Shown: in pieces, positions 8,278 through 57,323 of the stretch | Position numbering within the stretch: position 1 is the stretch's first letter | Layout of the letters: the number at the start of each line of letters is the position of its first letter | Virus record (IMG/VR): IMGVR_UViG_3300046005_000547 | Coordinates: 124,001-188,000 of that record | Length of the DNA stretch: 64,000 nt | Strand: one strand, 5' to 3' | Translations under genes and position numbers: made by a program | Notes under the pieces: model-generated | Seen by the model: the letters and a program-made list of their open reading frames with translations, nothing else | What the model was told of the DNA's origin: nothing | The model's database searches: none

Positions 8278-9081
8278 GTGGGAAGATTATATACTGGAGT
8301 TGTTGAGGATAGACTAGATCCTCTTCAATTAGGTAGGGTGAGAGTAAGGATTCATGGTAATATGACATCCAATAAGAAAGAATTATCAACAGAAGATTTA
8401 CCTTGGAGTCCTGTGATGGGATCCGTCTATTCGGCTTCTATATCAGGATTAGGGCATGCTCCAGTTGGTATTGTACCTGGAACTACAATTGTCGGTCAAT
8501 ACTTGGATGATTATGAACAACAATTTCTGGTGATGGGAACATTATATGGAATATCCATGACCAAATCTGCTGAATCTATTTCTGAGATGACAGGAGGTGT
8601 TGTATTTACAGACGGAGAAGGATTATTGGATTCAACTATTGGTATCGTTGGATCTGCGTTGGATTTAATGATAGATTCGTCTGCTGCCGAAAATCTAGGT
8701 ATACCAAAAAATGATGAACAATCAAATGAGACTCTTCTTGAATTCTATAAAATGGTACAAGTTCCTATAACAGAATTAGATACCATATACGAAATAAGAG
8801 CAACATCCGATTTAGATAATTCTGGTGTAGTTTATTTTACTGGTAAATTCGATACCAATTTGAATAAATTTATATTCTATATGAACGAACCGTCGAAATG
8901 GGATAATGTTGATTCTGAAATGTTCTCAAATATAAATCCATCCGATGAAACAGATACCAAAAAATATATGTACTTTTTGTATTCAGAAAATCCACCGTTA
9001 GTTACAGACCATCCTGAATCTGATGTTGCATTGAATTTCTTCGATACAAATTTACCACCGAATAAAATGGTACAAGGATAA
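8278..9081 (+). CDS. gp5: gp5 N-terminal OB-fold part (split gene, part A)
   Basis: GVVEDRLDPLQLGRVRVRIHG..LPWS..SGLG motif of gp5/VgrG OB domain. Confidence 0.85.
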   Translation: MGRLYTGVVEDRLDPLQLGRVRVRIHGNMTSNKKELSTEDLPWSPVMGSVYSASISGLGHAPVGIVPGTTIVGQYLDDYEQQFLVMGTLYGISMTKSAESISEMTGGVVFTDGEGLLDSTIGIVGSALDLMIDSSAAENLGIPKNDEQSNETLLEFYKMVQVPITELDTIYEIRATSDLDNSGVVYFTGKFDTNLNKFIFYMNEPSKWDNVDSEMFSNINPSDETDTKKYMYFLYSENPPLVTDHPESDVALNFFDTNLPPNKMVQG

Positions 9082-16083: not shown

Positions 16084-16139
16084 TTGCTTTCTCCTAAGTT
16101 GAAATTATTATATGTTAAATTGATAAAATATAAAAGTCG

Positions 16140-17820
16140 AGGAAGATACTATAAGAATATTAAAAACCATTAATAACTCTAGCTGAAACATCGACATAGT
16201 CTAGTATACGCTTGTTTTATCGATTTCGAAAGGAGTTTCTCGATGATTGTAATTTACACATTCGATTAACATTTCATCTTAAAGGCTCTTTCGATACATG
16301 GTATCTATTGATTCGATGTTATCGTTTAATTTAACAGTCCATATTGTTGATTTAAGATGGATTGATTATATCTTGTAGAGTTGATTGACATAATACAGGA
16401 AGATTCCACTAGGATGGATTATTGGACAAATAATGGATGTTAACAATTCAACATAGAACTATTATAATGTAAATTCCAAACAATAAAAATCCCGAAAGAA
16501 CTTTTGATTCAATCGGGATCTGAATGGCAGAGATTTTATGTTGAATAATTGATTAAATTAATACTCGATAAAGACATATTATTGTTCTTGTAGTAATATA
16601 AAAGACATTAAAGAATACTAAAACGTATTAATAGAACTAACTCAAACCGTCGACATAGTCTAGTATACGCTCGTTTTATCGAAAAGTCAAGAGAAAACTT
16701 TAACTTGTAATAATCATATTCGATGTCTAAGATTATCTTTCGATACGTTTAAGACTCTTTCGATGTTTGATTATAGTTGATTCGATACCCTCACTTAATT
16801 TAACATGGAAATTTGTTGATTTAAGATGGATTGGTTATATCCTGTAGAGTTGAATGATGTATATTGGAAAGATTCCACTAGGATGGATTATTGGACAAAT
16901 AACGGTTGTTATGTGAATGATTTGGAATAGGTATATTGTAAATTTTAAACAATAAAAATCCCACTCAGAATAAATCTGGTGGGATCTGATACGCAGAGAT
17001 TTTAATGTTGAATTATTGTATAGAATATACTCGATAAAGAGTCTTGTAGTAATATAGAAGAACACTTAATGAAAGTAAAGGTAATAACTGAAACGTCGAC
17101 ATAGTCTACTATACTACATTTTCTAGGATTTCGAAAGGAGTATTCTTATCCTGTAATAATCATATTCGATATGTCGTACATCGAAAGGATTATCTTAAGA
17201 TGTCCTCGATACATGATGATTACAGTTTCGATGTTCTTGTTTAATATAGACATCCATATTTGGATTTTAAGATGGATTGATTATATGACATAGAGTTGAT
17301 TGGTATATATTGTTTAAACTCCATTAGGATGGAATAACGAGCAAATAATGATTGTTATCAAACCAATATGGAATTGATATATTGTAAATTGAATCCAATA
17401 AAAATCCTGATGGAGTGGTTGGTTCTCATCAGGATTTGGAAGTAGAGATTTTAATGTTGAATTATAGTAATATAATAATGTCGATAAAGAATCTTGTAGT
17501 AATATAGAAGACATTAAAGAATATAAAAATGACCTTAAAGGCAATAACTGAAACGTCGACATAGTCTAGTATACCCGAGTTTCTAACATTTCGAAAGGAG
17601 TAATTAGACTCTGTAATAATCATATTCGATACCATATACATCGAAATACTATCTTAAGATGTCCTCGATACATGATTATAATTGATTCGATGTTAACATT
17701 AAATCCTGTCCAGAAATTTGCCAATATAAGATGGATTCAATATATCCTGTAGAGTTTCTTGTTTATTATACAAAGATTCCATTAACATGGAGTATTAACC
17801 AAACAATGACGATATTATAC
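16140..17820. repeat. Tandem array of four ~455-bp degenerate non-coding units (cluster 1)
   Basis: TCGACATAGTCTA at 16191, 16650, 17096, 17556; AAGATGGATT-N10-TGTAGAGTT block in each; hairpins at ~16485, ~16954, ~17400. Confidence 0.95.
16662..16690 (-). promoter_or_regulatory. sigma70-type promoter TTGACT-N17-TATACT inside repeat unit 2
   Basis: Near-consensus; other units have TTTCGA-N17-TATACT/TATAGT/TATGCT at the same place. Confidence 0.75.
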
Positions 17821-17829
17821 AATGGATAC

Positions 17830-17837
17830 TATAAATA
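17830..17837 (+). promoter_or_regulatory. T4-type late promoter TATAAATA
   Basis: Exact consensus upstream of GAGGAG RBS of 17862. Confidence 0.8.
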
Positions 17838-34341: not shown

Positions 34342-35463
34342 ATGACCAGCAATAATATCTATATCGATAAAATAATCGAATTATGTTCAGATAATGAACA
34401 AACAGCAGAGTATATCTCCATCGTATCCAATGCTCGAATTCGATCATCTAATAAAAAAGAAGCAAAGGTGATTTTGGGATACACCGAAGAACACCATATA
34501 TTACCCAAATCGTTTAAGATGGGTGGAGAAACAGATAAATTAAATTACGCTTATCTATCTGCAAGAGAACATTATCGCGTCCATCAATTGTTAATAGAAA
34601 TGGGATTGAAACGTAATTTACACGAGAAGATGATTCATGCGTTTTGGTTGTTAAGTGTGTTGGACAAACACAAGTCCATATCCGAAGAAGAATATCAAGA
34701 GTTGAAGATTTTAAGAAGCAAATATCATAATTGGAAAGATCCCGAATGTATTCAAAAATGTAGAGATACGTATTTCGAGAAAACTGGATTCACCCATAAT
34801 ATGAAAGATCCAGAATGTAAAGAAAAAAGTAGAGATACACATTTTGAGAAAACTGGATATACTCATTATATGAAAGATCCCGAATGTATCCAAAAGTGTA
34901 AAGATACTCTTTTTGAAAGAACTGGATACACACATCATATGAAAGATCCAGAATGTATCCAAAAGGGTAAAGATACCAATTTTGAGAAAACTGGATACGA
35001 CAATCCTATGAAAAATCCAGAATGTAAAGAAAAGAATAAACGAGCCTTGGAAATAAAATATGCTAGACCATTAGTCTTACAGATTCTACAAGACGTAGAA
35101 AAATATAATATTATTAATCCAAGAAAAATTATGGGAATCAATGACCCTAATTGGAGACACGTCGATGATGAAAAACTGGAAGAAGGATCTATCAAGTTCT
35201 ATAAACATTTAGATGAACGTAAAATCAAGATAAAGGAATACGAATGTAGGATAAACGAGATTAGTTCCACATTTAAATCAATAGATGATAAACGATCCTT
35301 GATTTCATATATCAAAGAAATCAAGGATTTTTATAATATAACAAATTATACTGGTATAATGGAAGTGGATAGAAAGTGGAAAAGGGGTTTAAATGTGCTA
35401 GAATTACAAATTGCATTAGAAAAATTATTGAAACATACCGTTGATAAATTCTATATGAATTAG
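34342..35463 (+). CDS. Free-standing HNH-type homing endonuclease with 23-aa repeats
   Basis: YTEEHHILPKS..GG..N..LSAREHYRVHQLL; ACTAAATA late promoter and hairpin leader. Confidence 0.85.
   Translation: MTSNNIYIDKIIELCSDNEQTAEYISIVSNARIRSSNKKEAKVILGYTEEHHILPKSFKMGGETDKLNYAYLSAREHYRVHQLLIEMGLKRNLHEKMIHAFWLLSVLDKHKSISEEEYQELKILRSKYHNWKDPECIQKCRDTYFEKTGFTHNMKDPECKEKSRDTHFEKTGYTHYMKDPECIQKCKDTLFERTGYTHHMKDPECIQKGKDTNFEKTGYDNPMKNPECKEKNKRALEIKYARPLVLQILQDVEKYNIINPRKIMGINDPNWRHVDDEKLEEGSIKFYKHLDERKIKIKEYECRINEISSTFKSIDDKRSLISYIKEIKDFYNITNYTGIMEVDRKWKRGLNVLELQIALEKLLKHTVDKFYMN
34735..35035 (+). repeat. 69-bp coding repeat, ~4.4 copies (KDPECxxKxxDTxFEKTGYTHxM)
   Basis: Unit starts at 34735, 34804, 34873, 34942, 35011. 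Confidence 0.92.
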
Positions 35464-35895
35464 ATTCACGTATATGGATTCCTTCCAGGTGAATTACATG
35501 AAAAGATTGAACCCTATTATCAACCAATCAAAGACATATTATACGCTCGATTAGGTAAGAGTCAAACAGAGTATTATATTAAGAGGAACATTATTGAATT
35601 CAGACCATTAGAATTCATGAGGGGGTCGACGTTTGATGATTGTATTATAGTTGCGGATGAATTTCAGAATACAACCAAAGAACAATGTTATATGTTCCTT
35701 TCGAGAATTGGTAATAACAGTAAGGTTATTATCACGGGAGATACCAAACAAACTGATTTAAAAGGTCAATCCGGTTTGGCTGATGCTGTATATAGATTAC
35801 GAGGAGTGAGGAGAATTGGTGTCACTGAATTTACAATTGATGATTGCGTTAGATCTGGTATCTGTAAAGATATATTGATTGCATATTCTGATTAA
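35464..35895 (+). pseudogene. phoH: PhoH C-terminal part lacking N-terminus/Walker A
   Basis: Frame open from 35464: GFLPGELHEKIEPY..PLEFMRGSTF..DEFQN..LSRIG..GDTKQTDL. Confidence 0.85.
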
Positions 35896-36888: not shown

Positions 36889-36950
36889 TCCTTTGTAATC
36901 TCATGAAATTTATATTGTATATGTATTATTTACAATCATCGAGAAAACTC

Positions 36951-36979
36951 TTGACTTTTTAATTAAAATAGTTTATACT
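36951..36979 (+). promoter_or_regulatory. sigma70-type promoter TTGACT-N17-TATACT
   Basis: Near-consensus, pointing into a long region with no credible plus-strand ORF. Confidence 0.8.
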
Positions 36980-36985
36980 AGATAA

Positions 36986-37620
36986 GAACCAAAACTTTTA
37001 ACTAAATAAGATTGAACAATTAAAAACTTTGAAACGCACGAAACTCCATATAAAACGAACAAAAATATAAATAAATTTAAAAAATATAAAATTGAATACG
37101 TAGAAACATCATAAAGTAAAAATCTAGTTCCAAAGCTGAATAGAAGTCCAACGAAAGAGGTCCGTCGAATAGTTGGCACACATTGAAAGGTTCCTCCCAA
37201 ATAATTGTAAACAATTAGATAACTATTGACTTATAGGTAAGTATAGCGATGTCTACGGGGTATGCAAACGTCAAATTGTGTGATAAAAGTCTTTATTTTT
37301 AAAGACAGGATGTGGGTGACTATAAGTTTGACCACACCATTGTTGAAGTCGCTAGAATTGGCTCAACAATGCCCCGTTTGAATCGCGAGATTGTAGACAG
37401 TCGTAAAAGGAAACCGGCAAACCCTCCTTACTTTTTCAGAAGTTGACTAATTCTAGAGTGCCTTTCGGAAGAAGCACACTTTACTCTGGTAGGGTAAGAA
37501 GTGCCTTTCGGGTTGCACTCGATGCAACATCTATATACAAAAAGCGACAGATAATCTGCGTAAGCGCAGCGTCGTAGATTATTAAACGAGCGAAGCGAGT
37601 TTATGGCTTTTGCTTTTTAC
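36986..37620 (+). ncRNA. Candidate large structured non-coding RNA (family unassigned)
   Basis: Promoter, locally raised GC, many nested stems, several loop-to-distal complementarities, U-rich end. Confidence 0.7.
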
Positions 37621-37859
37621 TAATACTCTTCCTCGATCTTCTCCGACCTCATCCGAAATTCATTAGAATCATCTTATGTTAAATGTATCGATAAAGACAT
37701 CTTAAAATCAATATACAGATTAATCTTTAAATGACACTTAACAAAAATCAAAAGCAATGGTTTAGATGAACAAAAAAATGTTCATCTAAACTGCTTCGCA
37801 AGGTTTCTGTTAACATTATTATATTAAGATGACCTTTAAATGGAGAATAGAATATACAT

Positions 37860-39275
37860 TAAAGATATTCTATATCAAATAAAAATCCCACTCAGAAATT
37901 TATCTGGTGGGATTTTAAGATTAATATACATTAGAATGATTCTAGTTAAATTTAACATTGATATTTGTTGTTTTAAGACAGATTCATTACATCCTGTAGA
38001 GTTTCTTGTCATATTATACAAAGATTCAATTAAGATGGATTATTGGACAAATAATGGATGTATTATAATACATTTAAAACATCCTATATGAATTTAAACA
38101 TATTAAATGAATCTCTATCGCATTCGATACATTAAATGTGTCTTAAGATGTTCTTGTTAAATTTAACATGGAAATTTGTTGATTTAAGATAGATTTATAA
38201 TATGACATAGAGTTGATTGACATATATTGTTGAAATTCCACTAGAGTGGATTATTGGACAAATTATGATGGAATTAAATGATGTTTAGAATCATATTAAA
38301 TGAAATTAATGATTTATATTATGTCTATAAAGACTCTTGAAGTAATATAATAAACTCTTAAAAACCATTAATAACTCTACCTGAAACATCGACATAGTCT
38401 AGTATACTGTCTTTTCTACCATTTCGAAAGGAGTATTCTTATACTGTAATATACAGACTCGATATCTAGTTTATCGAATGACATCTTAAGACTCTTTTCG
38501 ATACATGATTATTACTCATTCGATGTTAATGTTTAATTCTATACAGTTATTTGTTGATTTAAGGTGGATTCATTATAACCTGTAGAGTTGATTGATGTAT
38601 ATTGGAAAGATTCCATTAAGATGGATTAACGAACAAATAATGGATGTTATCAAAGTTGTATACAATTCATAATCTGTAAATTTAAAACAATAAAAATCCC
38701 ACTCAGAAATTCATCTGGTGGGATTTTAAATTATACTCGACTCCAATAAAATGTATATCGATAATCAGAAACATCTGATGAATCATAAAGATGCCCTCTT
38801 CCGATATACCCCATTACGATTCTATCGTCGAATAATCCATAATATTGATTCTTAAACATATTCATAATAGATCTATAGAGAATGATTACTATTATTTATT
38901 CTGTAGTAATATATTAATGTCTATAAAGAATCTAAGTTAAAAACTAATAACAATAGATACATTAACTGAAACGTCGACATAGTCTAGCATATCCGAGTTT
39001 CTGACATTTCGAAAGGAGTAATTAGACTCTGTAATAATCATATTCGATATGTCTTACATCGAAAGACTATCTTAAGATGTTCTCGATACATGATTACAGT
39101 TTCGATGTTATTGTTTATTATAGACATCCATATTTGGATTTTAAGATGGATTAGAATTATGATGTAGAGTTGATTGACATATTACAAGAAGATTCCATTA
39201 AAATGGATTATTGGACAAATAAAAGATGAATTAAGAATGGTTTGAAATGTTAATTCTGTAAATTTTATCCAATAA
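37860..39275. repeat. Second cluster of the same repeat (2 full + 2 partial units), same orientation
   Basis: TCGACATAGTCTA at 38389, 38974; core block at ~37974, ~38185, ~38560, ~39141; hairpins at 37881, 38693. Confidence 0.92.
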
Positions 39276-39309
39276 AAAGCCGAATGTCCTTTTCAAGACA
39301 TTCGGCTTC
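39276..39309. terminator. Terminator after recQ
   Basis: AAGCCGAATGTC..GACATTCGGCTT. Confidence 0.85.
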
Positions 39310-39311
39310 GA

Positions 39312-57107: not shown

Positions 57108-57323
57108 ATTTTCTCCTAGTTGAAAAACTATATTATAATCTATTATATCAGAAACGAAAGAATAAAGATATAATACATCTTATTTGTTGAATACACAACG
57201 AAAACAATACATCCTGTATGATATATTGTTCTAATCATTAACATTGTTTAAACGACAAATAAGATGTATTATAACTGATATTTTATCCAAAAGAAATCCC
57301 ATCATTTTATTGATGGGATTATC

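What the first reader, a model, noticed from the sequence alone, without database searches (positions are those of the whole stretch)
36951..37620. Candidate novel ~600-nt ornate, pseudoknotted phage ncRNA
Seen: TTGACT-N17-TATACT promoter, no credible sense ORF, GC visibly above the flanks, and dense complementarity: 37164-74/37221-30; GTCTAC 37251-56/GTAGAC 37393-98; GGGGT 37257-61/GCCCC 37371-75; GTCTTTA 37289-95/TAAAGAC 37300-06; TGTGG 37311-15/CCACA 37332-36; CATTGTTGA 37338-46/TCAACAATG 37363-71; AATC-GCGA-GATT GNRA hairpin; twin GTGCCTTTCGG..GCAC hairpins (37458, 37501); long-range 37241-52/37527-38. Crossing (pseudoknot-type) pairings: CTTATAG 37230-36/CTATAAG 37320-26, CTAGAATT 37352-59/AATTCTAG 37449-56, GTCGCT 37348-53/AGCGAC 37543-48, CACACA 37177-82/TGTGTG 37277-82. 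U-rich end ~37620. Known: size and complexity recall phage-associated GOLLD/ROOL RNAs, but I see no RNase P, tmRNA, group I or group II signature. Inference: an undescribed large structured RNA, or a replication primer RNA for the adjacent repeat cluster.
Basis: partly seen in the sequence, partly recalled or inferred. Interest (0 to 1): 0.88.

Follow-up and report, generated by a model that had tools for sequence, protein, structure and literature searches.

The report
Phage copy of orphan marine RNA
A non-coding stretch in a T4-like jumbo phage is most likely a real structured RNA gene, and rather than a wholly new class it is a divergent relative of the little-studied "Methylobacterium-1" RNA motif, which here looks like the core of a much larger RNA.

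Summary
Statistics support only some of them. The local hairpin clusters at 37240-37400 and 37456-37520 fold better than shuffled sequence. The long-range and "pseudoknot" pairings are at chance level. The first ~250 nt are unstructured. The "twin hairpins" form one long hairpin.

The region is a 729-bp promoter-carrying insertion (36939-37667) that the sister phage lacks. It sits in a region full of dispersed promoter/terminator repeat units. No frame shows coding signal.

Exact-word scans of the viral, metagenome and genome collections found no homologue. The only Rfam match is Methylobacterium-1 (RF01712): 24.3 bits against a gathering score of 40, E=0.04, + strand, full model length, exactly on the three central hairpins.

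The published seed alignment with flanks shows that the resemblance continues outside the Rfam model. A consensus built from the family's flanks (AAAGGARAYCGGNNNACCCNCC) hits the window once, 25 nt downstream of the Rfam match, with 0 hits expected by chance. An enclosing helix, three further helices and an apical hairpin occur in the same order with different sequences.

Verdict: a real structured ncRNA gene, a reduced variant of an orphan family mostly known from marine metagenomes. Its function is unknown. My guess is a trans-acting RNA made early in infection.

The parts
36939..37667 (.). 729-bp insertion/deletion relative to the sister phage; the whole candidate lies inside it
   Evidence: Shared flank ends at ...tattatttacaat (about 36938). 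Repeat-unit sequence resumes at about 37668. L005, L006 and L003 lack the segment.
36951..36979 (+). sigma-70-type promoter TTGACT-N17-TATACT
   Evidence: It shares the words AAAACTCTTGACTTT and TATACTAGA with copies of the - strand promoter of the dispersed repeat units.
36986..37140 (+). A-rich 5' part of the transcript, predicted unstructured
   Evidence: GC 0.23, AT skew +0.38. MFE z +1.9; 199 of 200 shuffles fold better.
37141..37254 (+). weakly structured 5' region, including the bulged helix 37164-74/37221-30
   Evidence: z +0.8; pair probability about 0.3.
37255..37377 (+). enclosing helix ACGGGG (37255-60) / CCCCGU (37372-77) around the three-hairpin core
   Evidence: Pair probability 1.0 for GGGG/CCCC. 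Family members have ACGG/CCGU, ACGGU/ACCGU or GGUA/UACC at the same place, compared by eye.
37286..37381 (+). match to Rfam RF01712 Methylobacterium-1: AAAG, H1 (37289-37306), linker CAGGAUG, H2 (37311-37336), H3 (37338-37371), CCCGU
   Evidence: 24.3 bits, gathering 40, E 0.042, model 1-103 of 103. The family pattern AAAG-N(14-34)-CAGGAYGNGGG occurs once in the window. Pair probabilities: H1 1.0, H2 0.99, H3 0.6-0.8.
37381..37392 (+). short hairpin AAUC-GCGA-GAUU directly after CCCGU
   Evidence: Each family lineage has a hairpin here with a different sequence.
37399..37448 (+). helix AGUCG (37399-37403) / UGACU (37444-37448), enclosing the conserved-loop hairpin and a small variable hairpin (37430-37443)
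   Evidence: The unconstrained MFE of 37250-37450 gives this arrangement. Family lineages have AGAGGAA/UUUCUCU, GAGAG/CUCUC or UUACG/CGUAA at the same place.
37406..37429 (+). hairpin AAGGA/UCCUU with conserved 12-nt loop ACCGGCAAACCC
   Evidence: The family-flank consensus AAAGGARAYCGGNNNACCCNCC matches only at 37406-37427 on + (0 mismatches, 0.00 expected). Stem predicted.
37456..37520 (+). 65-nt imperfect hairpin that contains both copies of AGUGCCUUUCGG
   Evidence: -28.8 kcal/mol, z -3.1. Its apex CACACUUUACUCU-GGU-AGGGUAAGAAGUG parallels CACACUUCACCU...AGGUGAAGUGUG in two family members.
37550..37583 (+). 3' hairpin GAUAAUCUGCG...CGUAGAUUAUU
   Evidence: Pair probability 0.96.
37584..37625 (+). 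weak 3' hairpin and U-rich stretch; the end of the RNA is not defined
   Evidence: No canonical + strand terminator before the hairpin at 37881-37913.
37760..37791 (-). 13-bp terminator for - strand transcripts coming from the repeat units; it would shield the RNA from antisense read-through

Best explanation
The segment is an independently transcribed, non-coding, structured RNA gene carried as accessory cargo in a hyperplastic region of a T4-like jumbo phage.

Host RNA polymerase starts at the sigma-70-type promoter at 36951-36979. The transcript begins with about 250 nt of A-rich, largely unstructured RNA. A core of about 385 nt (37255-37625) follows.

That core is a reduced, AT-rich variant of the RNA family whose central ~100 nt are known as the Methylobacterium-1 motif (Rfam RF01712). 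Its elements, in order:
- an enclosing helix;
- three hairpins joined by the conserved linkers AAAG, CAGGAUG and CCGU;
- a short hairpin;
- a second enclosing helix around a hairpin with a conserved 12-nt loop;
- a long hairpin;
- a 3' hairpin.

Shown: the promoter consensus, the absence of coding signal, the local fold signal, the insertion status and the homology to the family.

Inferred: the RNA acts in trans through a compact fold whose conserved loops and linkers bind a protein or other partner early in infection (decoy, sponge or scaffold). It is dispensable for the basic lytic cycle, because the sister phage lacks it.
For: - Promoter. It shares the words AAAACTCTTGACTTT and TATACTAGA with copies of the promoter of the dispersed cassettes.
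- No ORF and no Pfam or PHROG hit for any stop-free piece of 28 aa or more in six frames. No tblastx similarity to the rest of the phage group.
- GC island unique among ORF-free regions in the window and about 200 kb of related loci.
- Fold signal z -4.1 on + against -1.6 on - for 37240-37625. 37241-37400 is at about the 1st percentile of the genome's 160-nt windows.
- The only Rfam match covers the whole Methylobacterium-1 model on the promoter's strand and coincides with the three predicted hairpins.
- A flank consensus taken from published family members, outside the Rfam model, matches once in 128 kb of both strands, 25 nt downstream of that hit.
- Four further helices (enclosing helix, short hairpin, second enclosing helix, conserved-loop hairpin) and the apex of the long hairpin occur in the same order as in family members, with different or compensated sequences, compared by eye.
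- The family itself has published covariation support: NUM_COV 19, rated 'Y' as an RNA.
Against: - The Rfam score is below the gathering threshold (24.3 vs 40).
- The copy lacks the family's conserved H1 apical loop (GGUG..UAAA..AUU) and its pseudoknot partner.
- The comparison of the flanks is by eye plus one pattern test, not a formal alignment or R-scape run.
- Seven exact-word scans of the viral, metagenome and genome collections and BLAST of the phage and plasmid collections found no relative, so no close homologues are available.
- No expression data and no defined 3' end.
- The closest phage lacks the segment, so it could be recently acquired and decaying.
- The proposed mode of action has no direct evidence.
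Confidence: 0.6

Rival explanations
1. Non-functional cargo. The 729 bp were acquired from elsewhere by recombination between promoter/terminator cassettes. They are a decaying remnant whose higher GC content and hairpins reflect their origin, not selection for an RNA.
For: - Absent from the sister phage, and no close relative found anywhere.
- The flanks are cassette sequence of the PeSL kind, which is known to mediate such indels in T4-type phages (PMC2839356, PMC4122927).
- Long-range pairings are at chance level.
- It has lost the family's H1 apical loop.
Against: - The family's linkers, the 12-nt loop and all helices are intact.
- A consensus promoter is retained.
- The fold is strand-asymmetric in the promoter's direction.
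- There is no trace of a decayed ORF.
Confidence: 0.13
2. A novel structured RNA unrelated to Methylobacterium-1, whose resemblance to that family is coincidental.
For: - The score is below Rfam's gathering threshold and E is only 0.04.
- The conserved H1 loop is missing.
- Several short shared words (CAGAUAAUCU, CUCGAUCUUCU, GUAUGCAAAC) are not individually significant.
Against: An independent 22-nt flank consensus with 17 fixed positions matches at the expected place and strand, with 0.00 expected in the whole window. The order of helices is the same over about 200 nt.
Confidence: 0.1
3. A cis- or antisense-acting element. The + transcript is antisense to a 75-codon hydrophobic - strand ORF (36973-37200) in a type I toxin-antitoxin-like arrangement, or it interferes with leftward transcription toward the GNAT gene.
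For: - The open frame is long for its base composition, and a GGGAGG sits upstream of in-frame starts.
- A - strand promoter-like site lies at 37268-37240.
- Neighbouring cassettes carry small - strand genes, for example 38731-38865.
Against: - The codon-usage score is -0.24 against 0.26+-0.12 for real genes.
- No homologue among 1.84 billion representative proteins apart from a spurious repeat hit, and no Pfam or PHROG hit.
- The gene caller of the source record did not call it.
- It does not explain the conserved core.
Confidence: 0.07
4. A replication-origin transcript: a structured primer RNA like ColE1 RNA II, or like the T4 oriF/oriG promoter-plus-unwinding-element origins, serving the adjacent repeats.
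For: - A strong promoter is followed by a 150-bp AT-rich stretch.
- It lies next to a RecQ helicase and repeats with iteron-like short motifs.
Against: - The repeats are dispersed cassettes at at least 7 loci per genome, and none of the other loci has this RNA.
- The sister phage keeps the repeats without the RNA.
- Family members sit among unrelated small ORFs in marine scaffolds.
- An A-rich transcript makes a weak RNA-DNA hybrid (established knowledge).
Confidence: 0.04

Closest known systems
Methylobacterium-1 RNA motif (Rfam RF01712; Weinberg et al. 2010, PMC2864571)
   Same: - Three hairpins in the same order and of similar sizes.
- Conserved unpaired AAAG, CAGGA(C/U)G and CCGU.
- Purine-rich 5' strand of H2.
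- The same strand as the promoter.
- Downstream flank with the hairpin carrying the loop AYCGG...ACCC.
- Enclosing ACGG/CCGU helix.
- An independent RNA gene rather than a leader of one gene family.
   Different: - Scores 24.3 bits, below the gathering score of 40.
- H1 is a plain 7-bp hairpin with a UUUU loop, lacking the conserved GGUG..UAAA..AUU loop and the pseudoknot it appears to form with the 5' flank.
- Much more AT-rich.
- Has an extra ~300 nt 5' extension.
- Sits in a T4-like jumbo phage, whereas the family was known from marine metagenome scaffolds and one Methylobacterium draft contig.
GOLLD and ROOL large ornate phage-associated RNAs
   Same: A large (400-800 nt) non-coding RNA with many helices, carried by phages, of unknown function.
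   Different: No sequence or structure match to either Rfam model even at E<=10. No demonstrated pseudoknots or multimer-forming features here. The host phage is a T4-like myovirus, not the phages and prophages of Lactobacillales and related bacteria that I recall carrying GOLLD (from memory, not checked here).
PeSL cassettes (promoter-early stem-loop) of T4-type phages (PMC2839356, PMC4122927)
   Same: A strong sigma-70-like promoter and terminator hairpins are repeated through hyperplastic regions. They flank insertions and deletions that distinguish sister phages. The candidate is one such indel and uses the cassette-type promoter.
   Different: The repeat units here are 450-580 bp, with a ~250-bp conserved block of unknown role. 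The cargo here is an RNA gene, not an ORFan.
ColE1 RNA II / T4 origin transcripts
   Same: A promoter-driven structured RNA of several hundred nt next to repeats and replication genes.
   Different: No evidence of origin function. The repeats are not origin-specific. The RNA is absent from a sister phage that must still replicate.

Membership tests
Methylobacterium-1 RNA (RF01712) | Score at or above Rfam's gathering threshold (40 bits) | tested here: not met
   24.3 bits; E 0.085 for a 1-kb search and 0.042 for a 0.5-kb search. No hit at gathering level.
Methylobacterium-1 RNA (RF01712) | Three consecutive hairpins H1-H2-H3 over about 100 nt | tested here: met
   The alignment spans model positions 1-103. 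The hairpins at 37289-37306, 37311-37336 and 37338-37371 have pair probabilities of 0.6-1.0.
Methylobacterium-1 RNA (RF01712) | Conserved unpaired linkers: 5' AAAG, CAGGA(C/U)G before H2, CCGU after H3 | tested here: met
   The pattern AAAG-N(14-34)-CAGGAYGNGGG is unique in the window at 37286-37316, with 0.00 expected. CCCCGU lies at 37372-37377. Seed alignment.
Methylobacterium-1 RNA (RF01712) | Conserved H1 apical loop GGUGnnUAAAnAUU | tested here: not met
   H1 here is GUCUUUA-UUUU-UAAAGAC. The loop is present in nearly all seed sequences except the Methylobacterium sp. 4-46 copy.
Methylobacterium-1 RNA (extended RNA seen in the published flanks) | Downstream hairpin with the loop AYCGGnnnACCC, preceded by AAAGGA | tested here: met
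   The consensus AAAGGARAYCGGNNNACCCNCC, taken from three family lineages, matches only at 37406-37427 on +. Family flanks.
Methylobacterium-1 RNA (extended RNA seen in the published flanks) | Collinear helices outside the Rfam model (enclosing helix, short hairpin after CCGU, second enclosing helix, apical hairpin of the 3' domain), with covariation | tested here: inconclusive
   Seen by eye, and reproduced by the unconstrained MFE. The supplement sequences could not be passed to the alignment tools, so no formal count was made.
GOLLD (RF01998) / ROOL (RF03087) | Match to the family covariance model | tested here: not met
   No match even at E<=10 with permissive filters.
Group I / group II introns, RNase P, tmRNA, tRNA | Match to the family models, or flanking exons | tested here: not met
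   cmscan found none. ARAGORN found none. No exon-like ORF pieces flank the region. The order of helices is not that of the group I P3-P8 core (inference).
PeSL-type mobile regulatory cassette cargo | Indel between sister phages, bounded by repeated promoter/terminator sequence | tested here: met
   The 729-bp indel is shown. The promoter words shared with repeat units are shown. The repeat units are dispersed.

The most novel reading that the evidence does not exclude
The ~100-nt Methylobacterium-1 motif is only the core of a previously unrecognised large (~450-500 nt) RNA class carried by T4-like phages. That class would have an unannotated pseudoknot, two enclosing helices and a hairpin with an invariant 12-nt loop, making it another large phage RNA of the GOLLD/ROOL kind. 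This window would hold a reduced variant of it, giving the family its first complete genomic and promoter context.
Probability: 0.45. Interest if true: 0.7.

Novelty: new variant of a known kind. Interest (0 to 1): 0.5.

Why it matters
Methylobacterium-1 has been an orphan motif since 2010. It is known almost only from anonymous marine scaffolds, with no function and no host context.

A copy inside a near-complete T4-like jumbo phage genome gives the family a concrete biological setting. The copy has its own early-type promoter and sits in a swappable cassette that a sister phage lacks. That pair of phages is a natural with/without comparison.

The agreement between this copy and the published flanks also suggests that the real RNA is four to five times larger than the Rfam model. 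If so, the model should be rebuilt, and the family would join the short list of large structured phage RNAs whose roles are open questions.

Tried and rejected
- **Rfam at gathering level**, on the window and on 194 kb of related loci: nothing relevant, only a tRNA elsewhere.
- **BLAST of the region** against GenBank phages and PLSDB plasmids: no match.
- **Exact-word scans.** Five words from the RNA in IMG/VR returned only the window's own contig. The twin-hairpin pattern returned unrelated coding repeats. The metagenome 20-mer hit only a high-GC kinase-like gene by chance. The genome 21-mer gave nothing, and the 19-mer gave 23 chance hits with no extension.
- **Neighbour-gene route.** The GNAT gene has one homologue in 5.8 billion proteins. 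Its locus in the sister phage lacks the RNA.
- **Pseudogene idea.** No Pfam, PHROG or tblastx signal.
- **The - strand 75-aa ORF.** Poor codon score and no homologues.
- **Group I intron idea.** It was prompted by CGTCAAATTG and by a nearby homing-endonuclease ORF. I rejected it because there is no model hit, there are no exons, and the helix order is wrong. The phoH piece is not split by an intron; it follows the endonuclease ORF in frame.
- **RNase P resemblance recalled from memory.** Not supported by any model hit.
- **Repeat units as RNA genes.** There is no consensus fold on either strand in 41 copies.
- **Antisense targets in the window.** None of 15 nt or more.
- **BLAST of three typed 59-60-nt family segments** (two against phages; one against both phages and plasmids), to obtain referenceable relatives: no match.

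Full report
**Setting**

The window is part of IMGVR_UViG_3300046005_000547, a 234.7-kb phage contig with about 32% GC. Its genes include a baseplate hub/lysozyme, a tail-tube cap, ribonucleotide reductase, a primase and RecQ. Together they mark it as a T4-like myovirus.

The finding lies in a 2.4-kb stretch without long ORFs (36889-39311). A - strand GNAT-like gene lies on one side and a - strand recQ on the other.

**Observation check**

These features are present as described:
- the promoter TTGACT-N17-TATACT;
- the absence of a credible + strand ORF;
- the GC rise;
- every listed complementary pair.

Their weight differs.

- Over 37140-37625, the number of perfectly complementary 6- to 9-mers at any distance is what dinucleotide shuffles give. 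Only pairs within 60 nt of each other are modestly enriched. The four crossing pairings and the 37241/37527 pairing are therefore not evidence of pseudoknots.
- Folding energies show the first 250 nt of the presumed transcript to be less structured than shuffles (z +1.9 and +0.8).
- The fold signal sits in 37240-37400 (z -4.2) and 37445-37525 (z -3.3).
- The core 37240-37625 gives z -4.1 on the + strand and -1.6 on the - strand, which agrees with the promoter's direction.
- Against the genome's own background, the whole 480-nt candidate is unremarkable (background mean z -1.06, sd 1.5). The 160-nt domain 37241-37400 is at about the first percentile.
- The two "twin" hairpins are unstable alone. 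They pair with each other in one 65-nt hairpin.
- No canonical + strand terminator follows. A 13-bp - strand terminator at 37760-37791 would stop antisense transcripts arriving from the right.

**Not coding, not a known large RNA**

- No stop-free piece of 28 aa or more in any frame hits Pfam or PHROGs.
- tblastx finds nothing in the rest of the phage group.
- A 75-codon hydrophobic - strand frame opposite the A-rich leader has a poor codon score. It has no homologue among 1.84 billion representative proteins.
- Rfam gives nothing at gathering level. ARAGORN gives nothing.

**Context**

The sister phage IMGVR_UViG_3300046008_000242 has RecQ at 86% and GNAT at 63% identity. It keeps the order RlaP, endonuclease/PhoH, 130-aa gene, GNAT. 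Directly upstream of its GNAT gene the repeat cluster begins.

Alignment places the difference at window 36939-37667. This 729-bp segment carries the promoter and the whole candidate.

The adjacent repeats are not a local array. They are units of 450-580 bp, anchored by TCGACATAGTCTA and TAGAGTTGATTG, found at:
- at least 7 loci in this phage;
- at least 8 loci in the sister phage;
- three more IMG/VR contigs;
- a second cluster in the window itself, at 16100-17830.

Each unit has a - strand sigma-70-like promoter and a - strand terminator hairpin whose stem differs between units. Forty-one distinct copies show no consensus RNA fold on either strand.

The candidate's promoter shares the words AAAACTCTTGACTTT and TATACTAGA with copies of the unit promoter, but it points the other way.

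This matches the PeSL picture described for T4-type phages, in which repeated promoter/terminator cassettes in hyperplastic regions mediate indels between sister phages (PMC2839356, PMC4122927). The units here are much longer, and this cargo is not an ORF.

None of the other repeat loci holds a relative of the candidate, or any other ORF-free GC-rich island.

**Homologue search**

- BLAST of the region against GenBank phages and PLSDB plasmids found nothing.
- Five exact words from different parts of the RNA found only the window's own contig in IMG/VR (twin pattern).

No close relative could therefore be fetched for a covariation test.

**The lead that changed the picture**

With permissive filters, the only Rfam match in the region is Methylobacterium-1 (RF01712):
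- 24.3 bits against a gathering score of 40;
- E=0.042 for the 501-nt search;
- on the + strand;
- covering the whole model (1-103) at 37286-37381, which is exactly the three hairpins that have the highest pair probabilities.

On its own this is borderline.

The motif was published by Weinberg et al. 2010 as three hairpins. It was found almost only in marine metagenome scaffolds, plus one Methylobacterium sp. 4-46 contig. It was rated a likely RNA and has no known function (PMC2864571). I found no later literature on it.

The paper's supplementary Stockholm files are held as text. The clean seed shows the conserved unpaired AAAG, CAGGA(C/U)G and CCGU that the window copy shares. It also shows a conserved H1 apical loop that the window copy lacks.

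The version with flanks shows that the similarity continues outside the Rfam model:

1. Downstream of the motif, several family lineages have AAAGGA(G/A)A(C/U)CGG...ACCC.CC. The window has AAAGGAAACCGGCAAACCCUCC at 37406-37427.
   - A consensus written from three family lineages (AAAGGARAYCGGNNNACCCNCC) matches the 64-kb window once. The match is on the + strand, 25 nt after the Rfam hit, with 0.00 matches in shuffles.
   - This is a test independent of the Rfam model.
2. The stem around that conserved loop (AAGGA/UCCUU here) changes in a compensated way between lineages.
3. A short hairpin follows CCGU in every lineage, each time with a different sequence. Here it is AAUC-GCGA-GAUU.
4. A helix encloses the conserved-loop hairpin plus a small variable hairpin. 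Here it is AGUCG/UGACU. Elsewhere it is AGAGGAA/UUUCUCU, GAGAG/CUCUC or UUACG/CGUAA. The unconstrained MFE of 37250-37450 reproduces this arrangement.
6. The apex of the 65-nt hairpin parallels CACACUUCACCU...AGGUGAAGUGUG in two family members, with C-G replaced by U-A.

Some further short shared words are collinear but not individually significant.

I could not pass the supplement sequences to the alignment or covariance tools. Points 2-6 therefore rest on reading the published alignment, not on a computed statistic.

**Interpretation**

The candidate is best explained as a real structured RNA gene that belongs, as a reduced and AT-rich variant, to the family containing the Methylobacterium-1 motif.

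By Rfam's own criterion it is not a member. It is below the gathering score, and it lacks the H1 loop.

In the published alignment that loop is complementary, with clear covariation, to the five nucleotides just upstream of the motif:

| H1 loop | 5' flank |
|---|---|
| GGUGC | GCACC |
| GGUUC | GAACC |
| GGCGU | ACGCC |
| GGUAG | CUACC |
| GCCAC | GUGGC |

This looks like an unannotated pseudoknot. The window copy and the Methylobacterium sp. 4-46 copy both lack it.

The family's flanks suggest that the real RNA is about 450-500 nt, similar in size to the candidate's core.

**Function**

Function remains unknown for the whole family. My working mechanism is a trans-acting RNA that host polymerase makes early from the cassette promoter. 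It would fold into a compact structure whose conserved loops bind a partner. This is inference from its independence from any one downstream gene, its conserved loops and its accessory status.

I regard the rivals as less likely, for the reasons given under each: decaying cargo, a chance resemblance, an antisense partner of a small - strand ORF, and an origin primer.

**Novelty and interest**

It is a new variant of an orphan motif, found for the first time (as far as I could find) in a near-complete phage genome. It hints that the motif is the core of a much larger phage RNA. I score it as moderately interesting.

Noticed in passing
window 16100-17830 and 37660-39300; loci L003, L005, L017-L037: A family of 450-580-bp repeat units is dispersed at many loci of this phage, its sister and three other IMG/VR contigs (41 distinct copies). 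Each unit has a - strand sigma-70-like promoter, a ~250-bp conserved block with TTCGAT and AAGATGGATT motifs, and a - strand terminator hairpin. There is no consensus RNA fold. The units resemble PeSL cassettes but are much longer.
   Followed up: partly
window 38731-38865 (-): A 44-aa ORF inside the 'ORF-free' gap has a gene-like codon score. It is conserved in the sister phage (L003, about 8700-8830): reading the two sequences by eye, the first ~40 residues are about three-quarters identical. It is probably a real small gene carried as cassette cargo.
   Followed up: partly
window 34342-35895 (+); L005 9142-10626: A PhoH C-terminal piece (GFLPGEL... onward) starts in frame right after the stop codon of a 373-aa homing-endonuclease-like ORF (DUF7487). 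No N-terminal PhoH half lies upstream. The sister phage has the same layout. No intron model matches.
   Followed up: partly
window 57165-57275: A long inverted repeat (about 18 bp arms, ATAATACATCTTATTTGT / ACAAATAAGATGTATTAT) gives the strongest fold signal of the whole window (z -10.7 and -7.0 on the two strands). It lies in an intergenic region next to a terminator.
   Followed up: no
window 16954, 34211, 37881, 38692 (+ coordinates): Four near-identical copies of the hairpin AAAAATCCCACTCAG...CTGGTGGGAT. On the - strand each is followed by a T run (TTTTTATT) in the copies whose flanks I read.
   Followed up: partly
window 36973-37200 (-): A 75-codon hydrophobic open frame lies opposite the A-rich leader of the candidate, with GGGAGG upstream of in-frame GTG/TTG starts. 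Its codon score is poor and it has no homologues. It is probably a by-product of strand composition.
   Followed up: yes
PMC2864571 supplementary files 58 and 180 (published Methylobacterium-1 alignment): The H1 apical loop of the motif is complementary to the 5 nt immediately upstream of the motif's AAAG, and the two sides change together across lineages. This pseudoknot is not in the published consensus structure. The downstream flanks are also conserved across lineages, so the RNA appears much larger than the Rfam model.
   Followed up: partly
L017 2944-3016 (-): A tRNA gene (55 bits) elsewhere in the same phage genome, near another repeat-unit cluster.
   Followed up: no
Metagenome-contig collection: A 20-mer taken from the window did not return the window's own contig (IMG 3300046005). 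That sample is apparently not in the scanned metagenome collection, so the negative result there is weaker than it looks.
   Followed up: no
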